From Setoptus koraiensis (taxonomy: Eukaryota > Animalia > Arthropoda), in contig CM106585.1 of the NCBI GenBank assembly GCA_048013815.1, forward strand, positions 20,212,001 to 20,276,000: 64,000 nucleotides of DNA. Reading direction: 5' to 3'. A program made the translations under genes and the position numbers. Of the stretch, positions 51,402 to 64,000 are shown in pieces (position 1 is the first letter of the stretch; each line of letters starts with the position of its first letter). The notes under the pieces were generated by a model, which ran no database searches, had not been told where the DNA came from, and saw nothing but the letters and a program-made list of their open reading frames with translations.

Positions 51402-52462
51402 ATGATGATTGTTTCTCATCATCACTACCAGGCAGACAAAAAGAAGAACGACGAAGAAAGAGAAGCAGAACAACAACAAGTGGGGGAAGTGGACGAGACA
51501 CAGACAGAAACAGGGGCAGAGGCAGAGGAGGAAGAAGGAGAAGGAGAAGTGGAAGAGGGAGCAGAGGAATCAGAGAGGCCACAATTCAATCTCATTGGAA
51601 CAGGCGAAGAACATCATCAACAAGTAAGTCATAGATACTGAAAAAGTGATACTTCTCTTCGGCATGCTTAACTAGCTATGACCACTGTACCAACTGGCCG
51701 CTGGCATACTATGTGTGTGTGATTTACCAATATCGGCGACCACGGCCAACAACAGGTTGTTGCTTATGATAACAGCTCAATTAGTTAGTCACGGTCAACA
51801 TTCTTAATCAATCATAATCATATCTTAGTTAGTGGCTGTATGCTGTATGCTTGCATTGCTATGCTAATTCCTTCATTCTCATTCGACCATCACCAACATA
51901 AAGAGCTGCTATTCATCACGTATAAAAATTATCACGTTTATCTCTCAAAACTAACTCCGTCCTGCTAAGTGACCGGCTAACTAACTGACTAACTAATTAA
52001 TAACCAGGGCTCGCCTGTGTGAGCACAAAAGAAAAATAAGAGAAGACCCGAACATGCCGACTACTACGCTCGACTCAACTGAATTCTCTCCCTCTCTCTC
52101 GCTCGTTTTTGCATGCTAATCTGCTCAAATCTACATGAATTGATGGTGCTCTAACCAAACCGAGTTCCATATCTCATCAACAGTATTGGTGAGATATTTA
52201 AGCATTGAGTAGCTACATGTTAAAAGTAACAAACTTGTAGCAATTTTTATTATTACATAGTGAACCAATTGCCGTTCACTTGCGCAACGATTTTGTCCGA
52301 ACAAGTGTACATGTGCGCTGGATGGAACAGGTAGAGAGGGAGAGACTATGATCATGACGATTATGAAATGATCACTTTCAATTGGCCATCTTCTGTTTTT
52401 GTCTAACTAAAATTTAATTCATTTCAATTGATTACATAACCATACGGCACATACGCTCACAC

Positions 52463-52512
<50 letters not shown>

Positions 52513-55500
52513 ACACGTTTACTACACTAATACCACTATACTATAACCACTAAACTGGCTGGTTAGCTGTTGATTTGCAGCAAACAATTTTGTTGTAGTG
52601 GTGATGTTGATTGTTGTTGGTCGTCATTACCGATGGTGTTGTTCTCTCTTGTTGGATGATCGAACGATACCCGTCTATTTACAACTATTCTTCAAACGAT
52701 TCATTTCATCGATAACTAATTCATCTCCATTCTCACTCCACTCGTCCGTCCGTCCGTCAACCACTACAACTCACAAACCACTACTTGTACCACTTATAAT
52801 ACACCACTACTACTACCACTAAACTACTACTATTATTTGGCAGCTCAATATAGATAGCCAGTATCAAAGTAGCAGAAAACAGCAACTACAACTTCAATTA
52901 TCATGTGGCAAAACTGTCCAATTGAATCAATTTCCAATTTTCAATGGAGATGATGCAAACTATTCAGCATATAATAATAGTAATATCGATTGTAACTATA
53001 CATTTATAAATTCAGTGATTGAGACATCAACAGATGATATTAATAACAATAGTTACAATAGTAGTAGCAGTAGCAGAACCAACAGCGAGCCAACAATCAA
53101 TAGTGATCATCAACCATCATCAACTAATCCAGAGAATGCGCTTCACAGGCGCCAGTCGCTATTAAAAGATTTTAATTTCCAAGATGATCAGCATCATTTT
53201 CTCCATAATCAACAACAGCAGCTAGATACGGTAGTGGTACAACAACAGTACAGTTCACCAGAGTCACCATTACTATCGCAGTACAATCATTATTATTATA
53301 ACAATCATTATCATCATCGTTCCATTGAAACAAACTCAATCAATACTAATTTGGATTCTACAGCTACTTCGTCTGTGTCAAACGTTTCGGACAAAGACGC
53401 AGCGTCGTCACGAGATATTGAGACACACGATATTGAGACACATCAACTCAACAATCAGCAACACCAACAAACTATATTAGCGGCCGCTGCGGAGACTGAT
53501 TCAAAGGTGGCAAATTATATCGATAAATTGGACTTGTTTGATGGTAATAGTGGCAGTGGTGAATTTGCTTCATCATCTCCACTGTCGTCGTCTATATCGT
53601 CTTCATCCTCGTCGTCGTCGCCATCGTTGTCGTCGCCGTTACTATCATCGTATCCAGCCTCAAATCAATCGTCGCCGGCCCTGATATCGCAGCGATTTAA
53701 TAGCAAAAACAAAGGATTAGTAAATCAATATCTGTCGTCATTCTCGTCGGCTGTGCCATCGCCATCGCCGACTGCATCAAATCAAGACGACTTAATATTG
53801 GACGAAGTAGCTAACGGTCAACACAACAAACCCATCATCACCGATATAAAGTCCTATCATTTAACTGATGATCCGTACAGTTTACGATTTGACCAATCGC
53901 AATCACAACAACAACATCTTCCACAAACAACAACAAACAACACAGAGAACAATCTGTACTATACTGATTTATTTGACGAAAACGAAAGTCAAATGTCCAT
54001 AAATTCAAACCAAGACCAATCTCCCCAGAGCAGCCAGCAGCATCAATTGCAACAAACGCAACAAGTCCAGGATGTCCATTGGCATTATCAGAGTGGCGAA
54101 ACGGCCGAATCGTTACCTAGTCTACACAATCAGTCAAACGATAACATATCGACCTCTGGATATCCCCAGCAGCGTCAGCGCCAGCATCCGAACCAGAACC
54201 ATTTACATCAAATGTATAATCAACAGCAACAGCCGAAGCAAGAACAAATCGATTCGGTCGATATAGACAGTAAGCAACACTTACAATCACTTGTATCAAA
54301 CATTAATCAGAGTTACGTACACAGCAATTCACCATTAACTGTTCATCAAGTATCATCGTCCCATTCGATATTGAATCCCCAACAACAGCAGCAGCAACAT
54401 CATAACCAACAACACCAGCAACACCAACAACATCAACAGCACCAGCAACATCAACAACATCACCAACATCACCATCAGCAGCAACAACAACAGGTAGAGG
54501 ACACACCGACAATACCCAGTCGAAACGAACATAGCACGATATTGCCGCGGCATCAGTATCATCACACTATGTTACCTCATCATGCTAGTCGGCCTGCATC
54601 ATCATCATCTTCGTCACATCATCCTCATCAAACAAATCAACTAGTTAGCCAGCATACGCACGTTGAGTCTATATCTCAAACGATTGATTTTAATCTTCAG
54701 GAAACACAAACGTATATAACTTCATCAGGAGACCATGGTGGACAAATGAATCTCAATTTGCACCATGCACCTATGAGCGGTAGAAGCGAAACTACAAATA
54801 TACAACAGCAACTGGACAACAACAATATTGATATTATTGCAACAGCAACATCGACAGCATCGTCCAACTGTCAACAACATCAACAACTGCATCAATCGTC
54901 ATATCATCATAATCAACTCATTCAATCTGATCAAGCTGGAAATATATCGTCTTTAGTTCAGCAGCCACCGAATAGTCAAAATAATATAGTCTCTAAAGGT
55001 AACAGCAGTACCAGTTCTACCATTCATCATATTCCGCTCCTACAACCTGGCGCCCCTTGCCAGAATCAGACATCTAGGCATCAGCAGACTGGCCCCGATT
55101 TCACACCTCAATTGGATTTGCCAGCGGATGAGATGCATCAGGCCTCCAATCAATCTCAGTTTTCATCTTCCGGTCAGCAACATCAACAAAGTTTGACTTC
55201 ACATCATCATGGCCACCAGTCGAGCTATCAGGAATATCATGTCCATCATCACAATCAGCAAAGTGGTAGTGCGGATCAACAAAATCTTCAAATCCAACAC
55301 CGTCAACACGGCAACCTATATCATCAGCAACACCAGCATCAACACCACCATCATCATCATCCATATCAAATTACTAAGCGTCAGAAGGCCCCGATAACTT
55401 CCAATACACAATACTCATTTTCAGGACCTCAATGCAGTTTTAATCAGAATATCAAGTTGCAACAGCATCGGACACCAACATCAGTCAATCTACTACATCA

Positions 55501-56347
55501 TCATCAGGAGTCCGTGATATCGCCACCTTTTGTGACCGATGTCCAATTAGATAGACAAACATCGTTTGTAGTTCCATGTCCAACCGGCAGACGTCAAACA
55601 GGATCTCTTCCTTCGAGCCGCTCCCAACCAATTGTGGTCTCTTCAATGCTTCACGCATCAAATGCTTCTAACCTATTGGAAAGCCAAGAATCACCTGTTT
55701 TATCTGGAACGGACAACGCTGGCAACACTATCTCAACACCAGCACCATTGTCAGGCAATGTTTACCTAGACCATGCAACTGGATCAAGTAGTCAGTGTGG
55801 TCGTTCATCAGATCTCAACAATGGTGATACAACCACGCCAGCGCTATCCGTGGCAACCTCATCATCATCTGCGCAAATGAACCAGTCACAAATTCAACAA
55901 CAACAACATCATCAGCAACAACAGCAGCATCACCAACACCACCATGCGCCTCAGCCCATATTTATGCAAAATGAGTGCAAGGTTTGTGGCGATTTTGCTG
56001 CCTGTCAGCATTATGGTGTTAGAACATGCGAAGGGTGCAAAGGTTTCTTTAAACGATCGGTTCAGAAAAATACCAAATATGCTTGCTCTGGCACAATGGA
56101 ATGTATTATTGATAAGCGAAGGAGGAATAGGTGCCCATTTTGTCGCTTCAAGAAATGCTTAGCCGTTGGCATGGTCAAGGAGGGAGTCAGAACGGACAGT
56201 CTAAAGGGTAGGAGAGGCCGTTTGCCTTCGAAGCCAAAATCCCCATCAACATGTCAAGCTCACCTAACGACCCAGGACAGGTCAAGTGAGGCTTTGCAAT
56301 TGACAGATAATCAATCCTTACAAGGTGACAACTTTAATAGAAACTAA
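51402..56347 (+). CDS. Hr38: NR4A/Hr38 nuclear receptor without ligand-binding domain; exons 51402-51623 and 52844-56347 (about 1,241 aa)
   Basis: [35 protein letters not shown]...[27 protein letters not shown] plus the NR4A A-box [19 protein letters not shown]. Phase-0 donor CAA|GTAAGT (51623) and acceptor GGCAG|CTC (52844) supply an ATG to an ORF that the track starts at TTG. Stop at 56347 with AATAAA at 56352. The first exon is less certain than the DBD call. Confidence 0.88.
52458..52510. repeat. (CA)n microsatellite
   Basis: About 50 bp of CA repeats in the Hr38 intron. Confidence 0.95.
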
Positions 56348-56451
56348 TATAAATAAATAAAATATACCAGACTGTTTTTTTCCTTTTAGTAACATTGTGA
56401 AAAATTCTTTTATGTCTTGAGAATCTCTAATTATTAATTTAACTGGACTCT

Positions 56452-57249
56452 TTATTCCTTCCTACAAACATTGTGAAAAACTTCTAATACTTCAGGCAGT
56501 TCTTGAAGACTCTCAATTAATTCTAAGGTATCGTCGAAATGATCATCTGACAACTCGATTCTCCTGTGGGGCACGAGTTCAGTGTATGAGGCTACAACAT
56601 TTAAGTTTTGCTTCTCTAAATCTACTTTGCAGTGGTTAATTCTCTCTGGTTCCACTGCGAAAAGCCAGGTTTCGTCCTCTTCACTTGGATGAACTTCCTC
56701 TGCGTTTGAGTTAATGGCTGCCTCTTCTGCAGTTTCAAAATCTATCGTTTTGCCATCTTTGGTAGTATTTGAGGTCTTCACAAAACCTTTCTCACTGAAT
56801 AACTGTAATAAGGTATTCTCAGTCGCCAGCTGAGCTGCCGATTTTTTCATTTTCTTTTTACAGTCGCGCCTAAGAACACCATAGTTGTCTGTTTCACACC
56901 TTAGAATTAAAACGCTTCCACCAGGACCAACGACTTCTAATAACTTTTGTTCTATTTTAATGTTTGCCGACCTCTGTATTGCTCTGTCCATAGTGGCTTT
57001 GGGTATATTTAATTTGGTGGCCTCATTTAAAACATCTGCCAAGGCTTTGTTTAATCTGGGATCTGTCTGAAGATTGTTTTGAACAACTGCACGCCTGACC
57101 ATGTTGACATACCGGGAATATAGTTTAGATTTATTAAGGTCATTTGCGCCCTTAGTTGACTTGATATTTTGCCATTTAGAATGTCCAGCGTATCTTGATT
57201 GGCACAGATAAATGAACCGGTGCATCGGCTGACGAGCGAGTGAGTTCAT
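56452..57249 (-). CDS. TACO1: Translational activator of COX1 (YebC/PmpR family)
   Basis: Basic presequence, then AGHSKWQNIKSTKG, N.KLNKAL..A.KLNIPKATMDRAI, EVVGPGG...ETDN and C-terminal EVFHN. Confidence 0.9.
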   Translation of the reverse strand: MNSLARQPMHRFIYLCQSRYAGHSKWQNIKSTKGANDLNKSKLYSRYVNMVRRAVVQNNLQTDPRLNKALADVLNEATKLNIPKATMDRAIQRSANIKIEQKLLEVVGPGGSVLILRCETDNYGVLRRDCKKKMKKSAAQLATENTLLQLFSEKGFVKTSNTTKDGKTIDFETAEEAAINSNAEEVHPSEEDETWLFAVEPERINHCKVDLEKQNLNVVASYTELVPHRRIELSDDHFDDTLELIESLQELPEVLEVFHNVCRKE

Positions 57250-58036: not shown

Positions 58037-58768
58037 ATGTTTTTCGTTCAATTCATATACGTCAGCGGTATCATTTACATAATTTATCTGTGCAATGAAA
58101 TCGTTGCTAGTCATCACAAAGACCCCGCCTCATCCCATCATGTCGATATACTGAGCGCTCACTCAAATGAACATGGGGCGCATTCAAGAAACACCAATCT
58201 GAAGAATCGCTTTAATTTAAATATTAGAGAATTAAATCTACTGATAGATGCCGTCAGAGGGGATATGATAATGATGGGAGGTTTGGCCTTTGGGGCCTCA
58301 GAGGAACTCAAAAGTATCTACAATGGCGATGAAGAACATGGTCCCACTATTGACGAGGCAATGAAACTTTACCGAGACGTGGCCCATCTAACGTATTTGA
58401 ATGCAACGTTAATTTTGGATAGTTTATATATGCAGAAGGCTTACCAAATGAACAGACTGGGTGAACAAAATTCCTCTAATGATGTCAAGTATTTTGATAG
58501 CGCTAAAAGATGGGAACAGAACGAAATATCTCAACGTAAAAAACAAGTCCTGAAACCTTTACGTGAGATCTTACGAGCACTCCAAAGTGAGGACGAAAAT
58601 AGCAAGCTTGATAATTGGTTAAATAGTAATACCAAGGACAACATCTTGGATGATGTTCAGCCCTCCAAGTATGGTCCGTATCCACTGTTTCGTAAACTGA
58701 TAAGGTTGGTTCGACACAACTATGTGCACGACATCTTGTCCATAAAAGCGATAGAATCTAGTAATTAG
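58037..58768 (+). CDS. Hypothetical secreted protein (243 aa from ATG 58037), unrecognised
   Basis: Intronless ORF with a hydrophobic N-terminus (MFFVQFIYVSGIIYIIYLCNEIVAS) followed by a His-rich segment and a full-complexity body. Confidence 0.65.
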   Translation: MFFVQFIYVSGIIYIIYLCNEIVASHHKDPASSHHVDILSAHSNEHGAHSRNTNLKNRFNLNIRELNLLIDAVRGDMIMMGGLAFGASEELKSIYNGDEEHGPTIDEAMKLYRDVAHLTYLNATLILDSLYMQKAYQMNRLGEQNSSNDVKYFDSAKRWEQNEISQRKKQVLKPLREILRALQSEDENSKLDNWLNSNTKDNILDDVQPSKYGPYPLFRKLIRLVRHNYVHDILSIKAIESSN

Positions 58769-59372
58769 ATAAAATAAGTTTGAATAAGTTATTGTGGGAG
58801 CATCAGGGATGAAATCAAAAACTAAATACAAGTCGTCGAGTTGGACTGTATCTTCCCATGACTCTCTTTGATAATCTCTATGATTTAAACCGAACAGCAA
58901 AAAGAGCTCTCCAGATAGAAAGAGAAGTTTTGAGTAGCGAATAAAGGAAAAGATTATGATCAGGAGAGAGAAAAGAGCGACATGCCGGCGATTCGATTAT
59001 AGAAAGTAAATTATAATTTCAGCCAGCATAAAATCTTTTTGATTGATTTGGACTGTTTGGCATGTGCATTTCATAGTGAAGCGCTTGACCGCCGGCAGAA
59101 GCAGCGGCAGTGCTTCGGGAGAAAATGTCTGTTCGCAGCACTTGTTGGTCATCGCTTATTCTTTCTCCGCTCCAAGCCATATGTTTCTTCGCCAATCAAT
59201 ATCAAGTTTTTTCTGTTTACATTCAACAAGAGGAGAGGCGCCGTTCGCACGTCAAACAAAATACAATTCATGGCATTAGTTTAGCAAAGATTATTTGCTT
59301 GCGATTTAATGTGCGTTCATCTACTGATAAATTGATTATTTAATGAATGACAAATAGCATCTCACAACAACG

Positions 59373-60926
59373 ATGGCTTTACCACCGGCACCAGTTCCGT
59401 ATGGATCTACTGAATTGCACCGACATTGCATGGCTTTTTATCCAAATCAACAGAACCCTCTCCAGATCAAAGCCGTCAAAAGCTTCATTCAAGGTGGTCC
59501 AGATCCACTGGATTTCGTAAATATATACTCAAATAAAGGAAATGGTAAAAGTATACCAAGGCATTGGCATTATGTGAGCTTTGGCTTAAGTGACCTCTAT
59601 GGAATAGGAAGTTTACCGATCAGCAGTTTCCTTGGTTTCTCATATCCGTAAGTAAAAGACATTTATGTTGTGTCCTGACTTGGTATCATTTTTCGGAATT
59701 ACCAAGTTAATATTACCAAATTGATATCTAATGATGTAATAATTGATGATGATTTATTCTCATAAATATCCAGATCAAGTGATAACGGCGAGAAGCTCAG
59801 TGGCTTTGGATTTGAACTGACATTCAGACTCAAGAGGGATGACGATGAACCCGAGGGCACTGATCCACCAATATGGCCAGCCACTGTGATGCAGGCTCTA
59901 GCTCGATATGTATACCAAACCAAAAATACGCTCTGCTCTGGCGACCATGTATCATGGCATTGCTCTTTGGATGAAAGTGAATCCAAGATAGGCCACATGC
60001 TCATGACAGATGACCCTCAATTGAAGCAGATCAACACGGCTTACGGAAGAGTAAAATTTGTTCAGATTGTCGGTGTCTGCGACGATGAACTAAAAGCAGC
60101 CCAACAATGGGAAGGTAATTCTATCATCTCTATAATGTCGAGGAAAGTTGAAACTGGAGGACCCTACCTCATCACAGATATGCGACGTGTTGAGACTATT
60201 TACGATCAAGATACCACTCAGAGCGAGATAGAAGAGGGAATAAGTTCGAATGGCTCCAATCTTAGTGGCGTTAGTGCCAAGTGCAAATGGAGCGAAAAAG
60301 AACCTAAGTGGTTGGTCAAGAGAACATTGTCTAGTGGTAGCGAATACGACACAGCAAATGAACGTGCGGATCTGATTGCCAATGGACAATCAAGTAAATA
60401 TCATAAATCAGGCCATGGTAGGAAAACAGCAAGTAGGAGCGCAAGTAGAAATGACAGCCGGTCAGAGTCGCGAATGTCCTTCTCACATGACCAGAATGCT
60501 AGAAATCAATCGAGAATGTCATATGAGAGCGAGACAGGGGCATCGGAGAGTGGCGAACTCCTGAACACTATCTACCTCAACAGTGTACACTTGAATTTCA
60601 ATATGGAATCCGGGCGGTTACTACCGCTAGTTCTTGAGGGCCGTCTAAAACATAATAGACATTTTACATTCAAAAGTATCAACGGGGACATAGCTATAAC
60701 TTTTGTTACGGACTTGATTCAGGGAACTCATGCATCGCTCAACTCTCCTTTCGCTAAGCATGGCCCTTGGCTACAGATATTCATATCGGAAGAGGTTAGA
60801 CAAGAGATGCTGGATGACTTGAAAGAGTTGACCGAACAAACTTCCAAAGTAGATCTACCGAAAACCTATGGTCCTTGGCATATAAGTTCTGACCGTAAGA
60901 TGACAATTACAATAGTCACGGATTGA
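59373..60926 (+). CDS. SUFU: Suppressor of fused; exons 59373-59647 and 59774-60926
   Basis: YPNQQNPLQ, GGPDPLD, HWHYVSFGLSDLYG, SGFGFELTFRLKR, WPA.VMQALARYV and GSNLSGVSA; phase-2 intron CC|GTAAGT...CCAG|A. Confidence 0.95.
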
Positions 60927-61189: not shown

Positions 61190-64000
61190 TTAACGATGAT
61201 TGGATGCCATCATAACGCTATTTGCAAAAGGTCGCGCTCTTTGTGGCTTTCTTCCGTCTCTATTTCGTCTAGGTTTTTGTGCAAATGCAGATCCAGTTTC
61301 AAGGGCTTGAATGAGATTATCCATCACCTTACGATCGTCATCTCCGCGGCCTTCACTGGTAATATCTACAAATTGCAACTTACGTTGCCTCTCTATCTCT
61401 CGCTTTTCTTTCTCAATGTTGGCCCTTCGAATTTTTTCCTCTTGCTCCTTGAGCTTGGCATTCTCTTTGAGAGCTCCAATGAATTGATCTTTAAACATTT
61501 TGATATCACTAAAAAACTCGTCCATTGTAAACTTTTTGGGATCGAACACGTAGTAAGTTGAGAGATTCTGATACAACTTATCCATCTTGAGTAACATAGT
61601 TTGCAAAACTTTGTGCTCATCTTTAGCAAGAGCTAAAAACTCAGTCATGACTATTCCAAAGCGATCGTGTTCATTATGAGGCCGGAAATTCTTCAAATCT
61701 TTCTCCAAATCATTAATAGATTTTCTCATTGTATCTAATGACTTCTGCAATTGCTCTGGCGATATACGACTAGCACGATCTATTTGATGTATCTCCTCAT
61801 AGAAGTTTAGAGCTTCCGGGGCTTTTTCTTCGACAGTAGCTGCAAGGAAGTGTAATAATGTTGTTCTATTATCTTCTGCTTTAGTAGTGACTAGCTTTGG
61901 CAAATAACTTATTTCAAAACCTATCGCTTGGCCACGCTGTGAGCCTGAATTAAGACAATTTCCAATCAACAATACATATTTTAGGATAGTAGAAAATTTC
62001 TTTGACTTTTTGATTTCTTCACAAGCTGCCGTAGCTGCGGCTATTTCAGGTTTTATATCATTGACTATTTCTTCGAATCTCAACTTGAATATTATAGATG
62101 TTAGCCGGGGTTCTAAGCGTTTTATTGCCCCGAGGTTTAGAGCAAACTGTTCGGCTTCATGGAGTTCCTTTATCTGATCGCGATAGCCCTCGAGTCTCAT
62201 AAGTTGCCCTTGTTGGGGCATATACCTTATTAATTGTTGGAGAATGGCTGCATCTAAATATTGTTCATTTACGGATATTATATGATTAGCAATATCTTCG
62301 GCTGATAATTTACTTGATCCCAGAGTTATCATAAGATTCTGCGCTGCTTTCTGGTCCAGCACTTTGAGCTCCTTTGACCTTTTGAGAGTAGCCGTATTTT
62401 CAACTCTTCTGTGACTTTCTTGTCGTTGTATTCTAGATTTTGGATCAGAAGAGAACTTAGTAGACAATGCATCAAGTATATCATCTGTTGCTAGTTCTGT
62501 TTCATCAACATGAACCCAAAAGGCTTTTTCAGTAAGATTATGCAGAGATATTTTTTTCCAGTTTGTTCGTTTAACCGGTGTCTTGAGATCCCATTTTGGC
62601 TTGGGTTTCATCCCGAATGGCATATGTTCCGGATCTTGCTGACTATTGGAACCTGGAGTTCCATAACCTGGCATTGGTGGTGGCCCCATGGCACCTCCTG
62701 GAGGTGGAGGTGGTGGAGGCGGTGGAGGACCTATGGAACCGGGTGGTCCATTTGAAAAGTTTGGCATCGGAGGTGGTGGAGGGGGAGGCGGAGGCGGAGG
62801 CCCGGCTGGACTCATACCAAATTGCGGCGGGGGTGGTGGCGGCGGTGGAGGTGGCGGTGGTAAAACTGAGTTTGGTACATTAATATTTTGAGCCTTGTTG
62901 TTTAAATTCTCTGAACCATTTGTAATGGTAGGTCCATTTGTTATTTGATTGTGTTTTGGTGGTGTAGGTGGATTCTGGATATATTGTTTGGCGCTGAGAG
63001 CCTGAGACAATTGAGCATTTTTTGCCTCGATCACCTTCATATTCTCACTTAGAGAGTCTAATCTGGCTTCTAGATCCTCTTTTTCTGTAAGTGCTTCTTC
63101 TAATTTTCTGCCCAACTCAGATGAAATCATCTGTTCTTCAAGTTCTGATACGATGTTGTCAACTTCAATCTTGAATCTTTTGGTGTAACTGAAATCCGGG
63201 TCGAGACCGTTCTTATGAAGTACTATTTGTGAAATGCATTCCTCAATCAGCTTATAATAAGCAGGTCGCGCATATGGATCGTCTCGTATCAAGAGAAGAT
63301 GTTGTAACATGGATAATAGATGACACTCTGCCGGTGTTTCTCGAAGAGAACTGAGCAATAAACTAAAGCACTCTGTCGGATCATCCATTTCAAAACGAAT
63401 ATATCCGAACCTTTGCTTGAGTTCCTCGAAATCCTCCTCTTTCGCATTGATGAATATTTTCGTTTGGAGAGCCAAATTATTGGAAATTGTCGGTAGCTGC
63501 TCTCCAGCTCTGTTAGCCGATCCCGTTCTGATTGTTCCAAATTGCGGACCATCATTGAGCTGATCTACTGCAGATATATCTTTGGAAAATTTCTCTAATA
63601 GTGTACCAAGCCCACATCTAATGATTTCGTTTCTCAGATGAAGTCTGAAATCTAAATCATCAACACTGGACAATAAGGCGTTAATGAGTTGCATACAAGA
63701 TATCACTAATGAATTGTTGTCGGATATCATCAATCCAGCAATGATCTGTGAGAATCTCTCACGACATTCCAATTCTGAAATAATTGTCAATGCTTCAAGG
63801 ACTTTCTCGTGTCCAGAAGGAGGCACCAAACTCACGGCGGCCATCAATTTGACGGCGTCCATCATAACATCAGGATAATTAACATCTATACTGCGGGCGA
63901 GTATTGTCAAAGCTTCAGGATGATCGAACATTTGTTTCAAACCAAACGAGTTGTTCATGAAAGCCTTGAGACATTTTATACATTCCAATTGAAGCTCATG
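61190..64000 (-). CDS. dia: Diaphanous-related formin (5' partial: GBD/FH3, FH1, FH2, DAD)
   Basis: ECIKCLKAFMNN (frame open to the window edge), poly-Pro FH1, FH2 with AQNLMITL, GNCLNSG, GFEISYLPKLV and TLLHFL, and DAD-like VMDNLIQALETGSAF..RR. Confidence 0.93.
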   Translation of the reverse strand, partial: HELQLECIKCLKAFMNNSFGLKQMFDHPEALTILARSIDVNYPDVMMDAVKLMAAVSLVPPSGHEKVLEALTIISELECRERFSQIIAGLMISDNNSLVISCMQLINALLSSVDDLDFRLHLRNEIIRCGLGTLLEKFSKDISAVDQLNDGPQFGTIRTGSANRAGEQLPTISNNLALQTKIFINAKEEDFEELKQRFGYIRFEMDDPTECFSLLLSSLRETPAECHLLSMLQHLLLIRDDPYARPAYYKLIEECISQIVLHKNGLDPDFSYTKRFKIEVDNIVSELEEQMISSELGRKLEEALTEKEDLEARLDSLSENMKVIEAKNAQLSQALSAKQYIQNPPTPPKHNQITNGPTITNGSENLNNKAQNINVPNSVLPPPPPPPPPPPPQFGMSPAGPPPPPPPPPPPMPNFSNGPPGSIGPPPPPPPPPPGGAMGPPPMPGYGTPGSNSQQDPEHMPFGMKPKPKWDLKTPVKRTNWKKISLHNLTEKAFWVHVDETELATDDILDALSTKFSSDPKSRIQRQESHRRVENTATLKRSKELKVLDQKAAQNLMITLGSSKLSAEDIANHIISVNEQYLDAAILQQLIRYMPQQGQLMRLEGYRDQIKELHEAEQFALNLGAIKRLEPRLTSIIFKLRFEEIVNDIKPEIAAATAACEEIKKSKKFSTILKYVLLIGNCLNSGSQRGQAIGFEISYLPKLVTTKAEDNRTTLLHFLAATVEEKAPEALNFYEEIHQIDRASRISPEQLQKSLDTMRKSINDLEKDLKNFRPHNEHDRFGIVMTEFLALAKDEHKVLQTMLLKMDKLYQNLSTYYVFDPKKFTMDEFFSDIKMFKDQFIGALKENAKLKEQEEKIRRANIEKEKREIERQRKLQFVDITSEGRGDDDRKVMDNLIQALETGSAFAQKPRRNRDGRKPQRARPFANSVMMASNHR

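What the first reader, a model, noticed from the sequence alone, without database searches (positions are those of the whole stretch)
51402..56361. Hr38/NR4A with no ligand-binding domain and a >1,100-aa disordered N-terminus
The DBD and A-box sit at the extreme C-terminus (from 55976), followed by about 33 aa, TAA, two AATAAA (56352, 56356) and the convergent TACO1 stop 104 bp later. No LBD-coding ORF exists in the rest of the window (seen). NR4A receptors normally carry a C-terminal LBD with AF-2 and the RXR/USP dimer surface, and can bind DNA as monomers through the A-box (established). This protein would be a monomeric factor driven only by a huge Q/H/S/N-rich activation region plus an acidic first exon (inference). 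I recall LBD-less receptors being reported in an eriophyoid mite, so novelty needs checking.
Basis: partly seen in the sequence, partly recalled or inferred. Interest (0 to 1): 0.72.

Follow-up and report, generated by a model that had tools for sequence, protein, structure and literature searches.

The report
Mite Hr38 receptor without ligand domain
This is a real, well-conserved gene for an Hr38/NR4A-type nuclear receptor that keeps its DNA-binding domain but ends 34 residues later with no ligand-binding domain; the same loss was already published for Hr38 of the gall-mite relative Aculops lycopersici, so it extends a known case.

Summary
A two-exon gene (51402-51623 and 52844-56347, + strand) encodes about 1,241 aa. 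An NR4A-type zinc-finger DBD with its T/A-box lies at 55976-56242. It is followed by a 34-aa tail, a TAA, two AATAAA signals, and the stop of a convergent TACO1 gene 104 nt further on.

No ligand-binding domain (LBD) is encoded anywhere in the 64-kb window, by Pfam, by tblastn with 115 NR4A LBDs, or by a custom LBD profile. A syntenic contig from a close relative shows no unassigned conserved coding block downstream.

Two other compact-genome relatives also have Hr38 ORFs that run past the DBD into Q/H-rich tails without an LBD. The eriophyoid Fragariocoptes setiger keeps a genuine NR4A LBD in a separate last exon, so the loss is derived. The DBD is under strong purifying selection.

The protein most likely binds NBRE-type sites as a monomer, activates through its long N-terminus, and cannot pair with USP/RXR through an LBD.

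Greenhalgh et al. 2020 (eLife) already reported that Hr38, E75, DSF, HR4, HR51 and SVP of Aculops lycopersici lack a predicted LBD. This scan had already noted an LBD-less dsf gene elsewhere in this genome.

Novelty: new member of a known kind; interest is low to moderate.

The parts
51402..51623 (+). Exon 1: start codon and 74 codons, acidic (E-rich). The N-terminal MMIVSH resembles MMILSH near the N-terminus of Fragariocoptes HR38.
   Evidence: ATG at 51402; donor CAA|GTAAGT at 51623/51624; reading through the donor hits a stop after 5 codons. The MMI[VL]SH resemblance to P0004 was seen by eye and is weak.
51624..52843 (+). Intron 1 (1,220 nt, phase 0), containing a (CA)n microsatellite at about 52459-52510.
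   Evidence: GTAAGT donor; pyrimidine-rich acceptor TTTGGCAG at 52843; in-frame TAA at 52820 just upstream of the acceptor. Fragariocoptes HR38 also has a 5' intron of about 1.3 kb before its large exon.
52844..56347 (+). Exon 2: 1,167 codons plus TAA. It holds the Q/S/H/N-rich N-terminal region, the DBD and the short tail.
   Evidence: uninterrupted ORF; first in-frame ATG only at 53993. Q/H runs at exon-2 residues 513-550, 827-839 and 1018-1034.
55976..56242 (+). NR4A-type DNA-binding domain (two C4 zinc fingers, P-box EGCKG) with the T-box and A-box ([10 protein letters not shown]).
   Evidence: Pfam zf-C4, E 7e-29. PDB matches: NR4A2 1.6e-47 and the NGFI-B DBD 1cit 1.8e-44, against 2.5e-29 for the next subfamily. 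Alignment A1. pN 0.07-0.14 against pS 0.86-0.91 versus relatives.
56243..56344 (+). 34-aa C-terminal tail that replaces the hinge and LBD. It may be a vestige of the hinge/helix-1 region.
   Evidence: no Pfam family. In A1, MAFFT places it in register with the helix-1 stretch of relatives, at low identity.
56345..56347 (+). TAA stop codon.
56352..56361 (+). Two overlapping AATAAA polyadenylation-signal hexamers (at 56352 and 56356).
   Evidence: A similar TATAAATAAA motif sits at the very start of the syntenic contig L004, next to its TACO1 stop.
56286..56291 (+). GTGAGG donor-like site inside the tail coding sequence (phase 1).
   Evidence: it is the only GTRAG between the DBD and TACO1. The window-wide density is 1.5 per kb, so one in this stretch is unremarkable. 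Its phase differs from the phase-0 intron of Fragariocoptes.
56452..57249 (-). Convergent TACO1/YebC-family gene (265 aa). It bounds the Hr38 3' end.
   Evidence: It is 84% identical in DNA to L004:16-828.

Best explanation
The locus is the Hr38/NR4A orthologue of an eriophyoid (gall/rust) mite. It has lost the exon(s) for the hinge and ligand-binding domain and now ends 34 residues after the A-box.

Shown here:
- The gene has two exons and encodes about 1,241 aa.
- The DBD is NR4A-type, complete, and under strong purifying selection.
- No LBD is encoded in the window or in the syntenic DNA of a close relative.

Inferred from established NR4A biology:
- The protein binds NBRE-like sites (AAAGGTCA) as a monomer through its P-box and A-box.
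- It activates transcription through the long disordered N-terminal AF-1-like region.
- Its output is set by expression level and modification, not by a ligand.
- Without an LBD it cannot form the LBD-mediated USP/RXR heterodimer and has no AF-2.

The loss is derived within Eriophyoidea, since Fragariocoptes keeps the LBD in a separate last exon. It is part of the wider simplification of nuclear receptors described for these miniaturised mites.
For: Architecture:
- Pfam finds only zf-C4 in the 1,141-aa ORF.
- tblastn with 115 NR4A post-DBD regions finds no LBD in 64 kb.
- An NR4A LBD profile built from 168 sequences, run with --max against all six frames of the window, L001 and L003, gives a best E of 1.2. 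The Fragariocoptes locus L002 scores 7.9e-52.

NR4A identity:
- PDB matches to NR4A2 and the NGFI-B DBD reach 1e-47 to 1e-43, against 1e-29 for ERR and NR5A.
- The A-box [10 protein letters not shown] is intact.

Selection:
- DBD pN is 0.02-0.14 while pS is 0.84-0.91 (saturated) among the four related loci.

Relatives:
- P0002/L001 and P0121/L003 have ORFs that continue 170-180 aa beyond the DBD as Q/H-rich sequence with no LBD.
- In L003 a convergent gene starts 36 bp after the stop, and the next 10 kb holds unrelated genes.
- Fragariocoptes HR38 (P0004) has a true LBD: PF00104 at 30.6 bits, and the DHR38 LBD 1pdu at E 4.7e-22. It sits in a last exon after a phase-0 intron 39 aa past KPKS.
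- In a DBD tree the four sequences form a clade (96/99) and the three LBD-less ones group together (83/86).

Synteny:
- L004, from a close relative, aligns over TACO1, an orphan ORF, SUFU and a formin.
- The only other conserved block is 91 bp at 59100-59190.
- The orphan ORF has its own 230-aa homologue, so no hidden exon lies downstream.

Context:
- The window has no N.
- PMC7738191 reports no predicted LBD for A. lycopersici HR38. In that work, tBLASTn of the whole genome with T. urticae receptors found nothing outside the existing gene models.
- General NR4A properties (monomer on NBRE, constitutive activity, RXR heterodimers) come from PMC8583700.
Against:
- The Fragariocoptes orthologue does splice to an LBD exon from about the same place in the protein. 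A long intron to an exon beyond the window's end (more than 7.6 kb away, across four genes) is therefore not formally excluded.
- The rest of the genome could not be searched for a separate LBD gene.
- DNA binding, monomer status and activation by the N-terminus are inferred and were not tested.
- The N-terminus shows no significant similarity to known AF-1 regions.
Confidence: 0.8

Rival explanations
1. The gene is a canonical Hr38. Its LBD exon lies beyond the window, or is too diverged to recognise, and is reached by splicing from a donor in the tail (for example GTGAGG at 56286) across TACO1 and the following genes.
For: The Fragariocoptes orthologue has an intron 39 aa after KPKS followed by an LBD exon. 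A good donor-like hexamer exists at 56286. No RNA data were available.
Against: - There is no LBD signal in any frame of the 64 kb, although the diverged Fragariocoptes LBD is detected easily.
- There is no unassigned conserved coding block in the 7.6 kb downstream when compared with a close relative.
- The donor phase (1) does not match the Fragariocoptes intron (phase 0).
- GTRAG occurs 1.5 times per kb by chance.
- Two relatives read straight through into non-LBD tails.
- An intron longer than 7.6 kb spanning four genes would be unusual in so compact a genome.
- The published whole-genome tBLASTn in A. lycopersici found no stray receptor pieces.
Confidence: 0.08
2. The LBD survives as a separate gene elsewhere in the genome (gene fission). 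It could act in trans, in the way DBD-less NR0B proteins do.
For: Nothing direct. It cannot be excluded because only this window and a few contigs could be searched.
Against: For A. lycopersici, tBLASTn with T. urticae receptor proteins found only overlaps with existing gene models. No LBD-only NR4A fragment appeared among the closest database hits.
Confidence: 0.05
3. The locus is a decaying or truncated pseudogene, or an assembly artefact, and not a functional LBD-less receptor.
For: Half the protein is low-complexity sequence. The tail has no recognisable motif.
Against: - The ORF is intact over 1,167 codons with a matching 5' exon.
- The DBD has all its cysteines, the P-box and the A-box.
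- pN is far below pS.
- The same architecture is kept in two other species that have diverged to saturation at silent sites.
- The window has no N, and the TACO1 side is collinear with an independent assembly.
Confidence: 0.04

Closest known systems
Aculops lycopersici HR38 (Greenhalgh et al. 2020, eLife 9:e56689; PMC7738191)
   Same: An eriophyoid mite Hr38 orthologue with a DBD but no predicted LBD (PF00104/cl11397 absent). It sits in a compact, intron-poor genome where E75, DSF, HR4, HR51 and SVP show the same loss.
   Different: The species is probably different. This genome has two pieces and at least about 47 Mb of windows. That fits Setoptus koraiensis (PMC11920263) and not the 32.5-Mb A. 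lycopersici.
Fragariocoptes setiger HR38 (P0004, GCA_019968535.1)
   Same: Closest named relative. It shares the eriophyoid-specific DBD substitutions (KRSVQK, KEGVRT, F/Y in GDxAAC), a very long Q-rich N-terminus, and a 5' intron of about 1.3 kb before a giant exon.
   Different: It retains a real NR4A LBD in a last exon after a 133-nt phase-0 intron. The window gene stops at about that position.
Canonical NR4A receptors (Drosophila DHR38; vertebrate NR4A1/Nur77, NR4A2/Nurr1, NR4A3/NOR-1)
   Same: The DBD is about 80% identical, with an intact P-box and A-box. The expected behaviour is monomeric NBRE binding and ligand-independent, AF-1-driven activity.
   Different: There is no LBD. That removes AF-2, the co-regulator surface and LBD-mediated USP/RXR heterodimerisation. 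The N-terminus is three to four times longer. The second zinc finger (D-box region) has diverged: [10 protein letters not shown] against CLxNKxCPVD.
NR0A receptors (Drosophila Knirps, Knrl, Eagle) and C. elegans ODR-7
   Same: Nuclear-receptor zinc-finger proteins that work without an LBD (recalled from the literature, not tested here).
   Different: Those are separate, old lineages with their own DBD types. Here the DBD is unambiguously NR4A, and the loss is recent and lineage-specific.

Membership tests
NR4A (Hr38/NGFI-B) subfamily of nuclear receptors | C4-type double zinc-finger DBD with P-box EGCKG | tested here: met
   Pfam PF00105 at 100.5 bits. All conserved cysteines and CEGCKG are present in alignment A1.
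NR4A (Hr38/NGFI-B) subfamily of nuclear receptors | C-terminal extension with T-box and A-box (…[12 protein letters not shown]) that allows monomer binding to the NBRE | tested here: met
   The sequence is invariant with canonical NR4A apart from one V-to-G change in KEGV. The binding itself was not assayed.
NR4A (Hr38/NGFI-B) subfamily of nuclear receptors | DBD closer to NR4A than to any other subfamily | tested here: met
   PDB phmmer gives the four NR4A entries at 1.6e-47 to 1e-42, with the next (ERR gamma) at 2.5e-29. All the closest database hits are NR4A/HR38.
NR4A (Hr38/NGFI-B) subfamily of nuclear receptors | C-terminal ligand-binding domain (PF00104) of the NR4A type, with AF-2 and the USP/RXR dimer surface | tested here: not met
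   No PF00104. No tblastn or profile hit in the window. So it is an NR4A orthologue by descent of its DBD, not a canonical two-domain NR4A receptor.
NR4A (Hr38/NGFI-B) subfamily of nuclear receptors | N-terminal AF-1 activation region | tested here: inconclusive
   A long N-terminal region is present, but it has no significant similarity to known AF-1 regions. The best alignment covers the DS..FEDLKLLDFP motif at E 3.
LBD-less eriophyoid nuclear receptors (as described for A. lycopersici HR38, E75, DSF, HR4, HR51, SVP) | Orthologue of a normally DBD+LBD arthropod receptor with no PF00104 or CDD LBD | tested here: met
   The criterion is the one used in PMC7738191.
LBD-less eriophyoid nuclear receptors (as described for A. 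lycopersici HR38, E75, DSF, HR4, HR51, SVP) | Genome of an eriophyoid mite | tested here: inconclusive
   The DBD forms a 96/99-supported clade with Fragariocoptes setiger HR38. The genome is compact and intron-poor. Two pieces and about 47-49 Mb fit Setoptus koraiensis. The species name itself was not available.
NR0A (Knirps-like) receptors | Knirps-type DBD and kni-box | tested here: not met
   The DBD is NR4A-type. Only the DBD-only architecture is shared.

The most novel reading that the evidence does not exclude
LBD loss in Hr38 may not be an ancestral feature of all eriophyoids. It may instead have happened after the split from the Fragariocoptes lineage, or more than once if this genome is the conifer-feeding Setoptus. 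The truncation falls about where the ancestral hinge/LBD intron lay. That would make these mites a natural series (LBD kept, 170-aa Q/H tail, 34-aa tail) showing that the conserved core function of an NR4A receptor needs only the DBD, the A-box and the N-terminus.
Probability: 0.3. Interest if true: 0.45.

Novelty: new member of a known kind. Interest (0 to 1): 0.3.

Why it matters
NR4A/Hr38 receptors are immediate-early transcription factors. Whether their LBD binds a ligand, and how much it contributes beyond USP/RXR pairing, is still debated. A lineage that has kept the DBD and A-box under strong selection for a long time while discarding the LBD is natural evidence that the DNA-binding and N-terminal functions are sufficient there.

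It also shows that the simplification of nuclear receptors reported for one miniaturised mite extends to other eriophyoids. One phytoptid, Fragariocoptes, still has the Hr38 LBD, which gives a bracket for dating the loss.

The basic fact is already published, so this is confirmation and extension of a known case.

Tried and rejected
According to its data paper, the probable source species has only DNA runs deposited.
- Same-species or near-identical Hr38 proteins in the 5.8-billion-protein collection, searched at two length ranges. None was found, and the best hit is 85-87% identical in the DBD only. The top-scoring C. brenneri hit (P0001) appears to owe its score to low-complexity Q/H matching.
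- A. lycopersici HR38 sequence or gene id in the eLife supplements: no occurrence in the 200 files held.
- SRA run ids of the Logan contigs in the paper library: nothing relevant, so the species of L001, L003 and L004 remain unnamed.
- The only unassigned + strand ORF downstream (58037-58765) as a possible cryptic LBD. It has no Pfam hit and no Atlas hit. The AlphaFold single-sequence model is unusable (pLDDT 39), so no fold search was run. It does have its own 230-aa homologue in the syntenic contig, so it is an independent gene.
- A relic of the Fragariocoptes donor site in the window tail. Candidate GTs are in phase 1 or 2, not phase 0, so the idea that the gene was truncated at the old exon boundary stays a positional coincidence (34 against 39 aa).
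- Similarity of exon 1 and the N-terminal region to other NR4A N-termini: nothing significant.
- The joined exon 1 + exon 2 protein was not submitted to any search. Exons were handled separately by reference. Only residue counts were pooled.
- The costly representative-protein search was not used, because the claim does not rest on an absence of relatives.
Full report
**What is there**

The + strand carries a two-exon gene.
- Exon 1 (51402-51623) starts at an ATG and encodes 74 mostly acidic residues. It ends at a strong donor, CAA|GTAAGT. Reading through that donor hits a stop five codons later.
- A 1,220-nt intron with a (CA)n run follows. It ends at a pyrimidine-rich acceptor, TTTGGCAG|CTC, at 52843/52844, just after an in-frame TAA at 52820.
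- Exon 2 (52844-56347) is open for 1,167 codons. Its first in-frame ATG comes only at codon 384 (53993), which argues that the start codon is supplied by exon 1.
- The model protein is about 1,241 aa. The 1,118 residues before the DBD are 48% Q, S, H and N, with Q/H runs of up to 29 residues.
- The joined protein was never sent to a search tool. The exons were treated separately by reference.

**The DBD**

Pfam finds one domain, zf-C4, at E 7e-29. From the first Cys codon at 55976 to KPKS at 56242, the sequence has every conserved cysteine, the EGCKG P-box and the NR4A T/A-box [13 protein letters not shown].

Against solved structures the best matches are NR4A2 (1.6e-47), the NGFI-B DBD of the NBRE complex 1cit (1.8e-44), NR4A1 and Nurr1. 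The next subfamily, ERR gamma, scores 2.5e-29. All the closest database proteins are NR4A/HR38. The NR4A assignment of the DBD is secure.

**The 3' end**

After KPKS come 34 residues with no family match, then TAA at 56345-56347 and AATAAA at 56352 and 56356. The stop of a convergent 265-aa TACO1/YebC gene lies at 56452, 104 nt further on.

**Is an LBD hidden somewhere?**

Four tests say no.
- tblastn of the post-DBD regions of 115 NR4A proteins, including the diverged Fragariocoptes one, gave no LBD match better than E 0.04 in the 64 kb. The single stronger hit (E 2e-7) falls on the DBD/A-box itself.
- A profile built from 168 NR4A LBDs was run with all filters off against every stop-to-stop frame of the window. 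The best E was 1.2. The Fragariocoptes locus scored 7.9e-52, though that sequence was in the profile. Independent controls are Pfam at 30.6 bits and the DHR38 LBD 1pdu at 4.7e-22.
- A 10.6-kb Logan contig (L004) from a close relative is collinear with the window from the TACO1 stop onward, at 75-88% DNA identity. The only conserved blocks are TACO1, an orphan ORF, SUFU, a formin, and one 91-bp piece at 59100-59190. The orphan ORF (58037-58765) has its own 230-aa homologue there. Nothing downstream looks like an unassigned conserved exon.
- The window contains no N.

It is the only GTRAG between the DBD and TACO1, GTRAG occurs 1.5 times per kb across the window, and it is in phase 1.

**Relatives**

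*Fragariocoptes setiger* HR38 (P0004, 1,717 aa) shares the lineage-specific DBD substitutions. These are S in KRSVQK, G in KEGVRT, K in F/YKKC, and F/Y in GDxAAC.
- Its gene has a 5' intron of about 1.3 kb and a giant exon holding the N-terminus and DBD.
- A 133-nt phase-0 intron then follows, 39 residues after its SNPKS (the KPKS position).
- A last exon encodes a genuine NR4A LBD.

The eriophyoid ancestor therefore had the LBD, and its absence here is a derived loss. The truncation point (34 aa after KPKS) lies near the ancestral exon boundary (39 aa). No relic donor in the right phase was found, so this remains a positional observation.

Two further proteins come from unnamed compact genomes: P0002 on L001 and P0121 on L003.
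- Both read 170-180 residues beyond the DBD into Q/H-rich sequence with no LBD.
- In L003 a convergent gene starts 36 bp after the stop. The next 10 kb holds Mat89Bb, dUTPase, an M16 peptidase, HSP90 and an aminotransferase.

In a DBD-only tree the four sequences form a clade (96/99). The three LBD-less ones group together with moderate support (83/86). That fits a single loss after the Fragariocoptes split, but 88 columns cannot settle it.

**Is the gene functional?**

Among the four loci, synonymous sites in the DBD are saturated (pS 0.84-0.91), while pN is 0.02-0.14. The LBD-less form has therefore been maintained by selection over long times. This argues against a pseudogene.

**Mechanism (inferred)**

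NR4A receptors bind the NBRE AAAGGTCA as monomers. They are regarded as constitutively active factors controlled by expression level and modification. NR4A1 and NR4A2 can pair with RXR (PMC8583700).

With an intact P-box and A-box but no LBD, this protein should still bind NBRE-type sites as a monomer. It should rely on its N-terminal region for activation. It cannot make the LBD-mediated USP/RXR heterodimer and cannot present an AF-2 surface. None of this was assayed.

The second zinc finger (D-box region) has diverged in the LBD-less sequences, CSG[TS]M[ED]CI[IV]D against CLxNKxCPVD. The meaning of that change is unknown.

**What is already known**

Greenhalgh et al. 2020 (PMC7738191) state that for E75, DSF, HR4, HR38, HR51 and SVP of *Aculops lycopersici* "an LBD was not predicted". 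They add that tBLASTn of that genome with *T. urticae* receptors found only existing gene models.

An earlier follow-up in this scan reached the same conclusion for the dsf gene on the other piece of this genome (s1-338129). I did not re-test that locus.

**Which species**

The scan holds this genome as two pieces with 773 windows. That fits the 47-Mb, two-chromosome assembly of *Setoptus koraiensis* (PMC11920263) and not the 32.5-Mb *A. lycopersici*. This is an inference from assembly statistics only.

**Limits**

There is no transcript evidence for the 3' end or the splice.
- The rest of the genome could not be searched.

**Verdict**

It is a new member of a published kind. The useful additions are that Fragariocoptes retains the LBD and that at least two other lineages share the loss.

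Noticed in passing
window 58037-58765 (+), with L004:1435-2127: An orphan gene of about 243 aa with an N-terminal hydrophobic helix. It has no Pfam or Atlas match. Only one homologue turned up in the 5.8-billion-protein word search (P0226, 66% identity), and it lies in the syntenic position of a close relative. The AlphaFold single-sequence model is unusable (pLDDT 39).
   Followed up: partly
window 59100-59190, with L004:2908-3004: A 91-bp non-coding block, 75% identical between the two species. It lies between the orphan gene and SUFU, about 180 bp upstream of the SUFU start, and could be a promoter element or a small RNA.
   Followed up: no
window 59373-59651 and 59886-60926 (+): Suppressor-of-fused (SUFU) gene split into two ORFs. 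The same split is called in L004 (90-aa and 398-aa products), so it is probably a retained intron and not a frameshift.
   Followed up: no
L002:5375-5401 (Fragariocoptes setiger HR38): Retention of the 133-nt intron after the hinge would add 9 codons and then a stop. That would give an LBD-less isoform much like the protein encoded in the window. It is a possible evolutionary route to the loss.
   Followed up: no
window 56075-56105 (second zinc finger); same region in L001 and L003: The D-box and second-finger stretch has diverged in all three LBD-less Hr38 proteins (CSG[TS]M[ED]CI[IV]D) relative to LBD-bearing NR4As, including Fragariocoptes (C[LS]xN[KR]xCPVD). Their DBD branches are longer in the tree.
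   Followed up: partly
window 52459-52510: A (CA)n microsatellite of about 50 nt inside Hr38 intron 1.
   Followed up: no
window 61190-63988 (-): A formin-family gene, a single 932-aa ORF running off the window, with three poly-proline FH1 runs. It is 88% identical in DNA to L004.
   Followed up: no
L004:1-16 against window 56348-56363: The syntenic contig begins with TATAAATAAACAAATT directly next to its TACO1 stop. That resembles the TATAAATAAATAAAAT that follows the Hr38 stop in the window. In that relative, the Hr38 3' end may lie only about 15 nt from TACO1.
   Followed up: no
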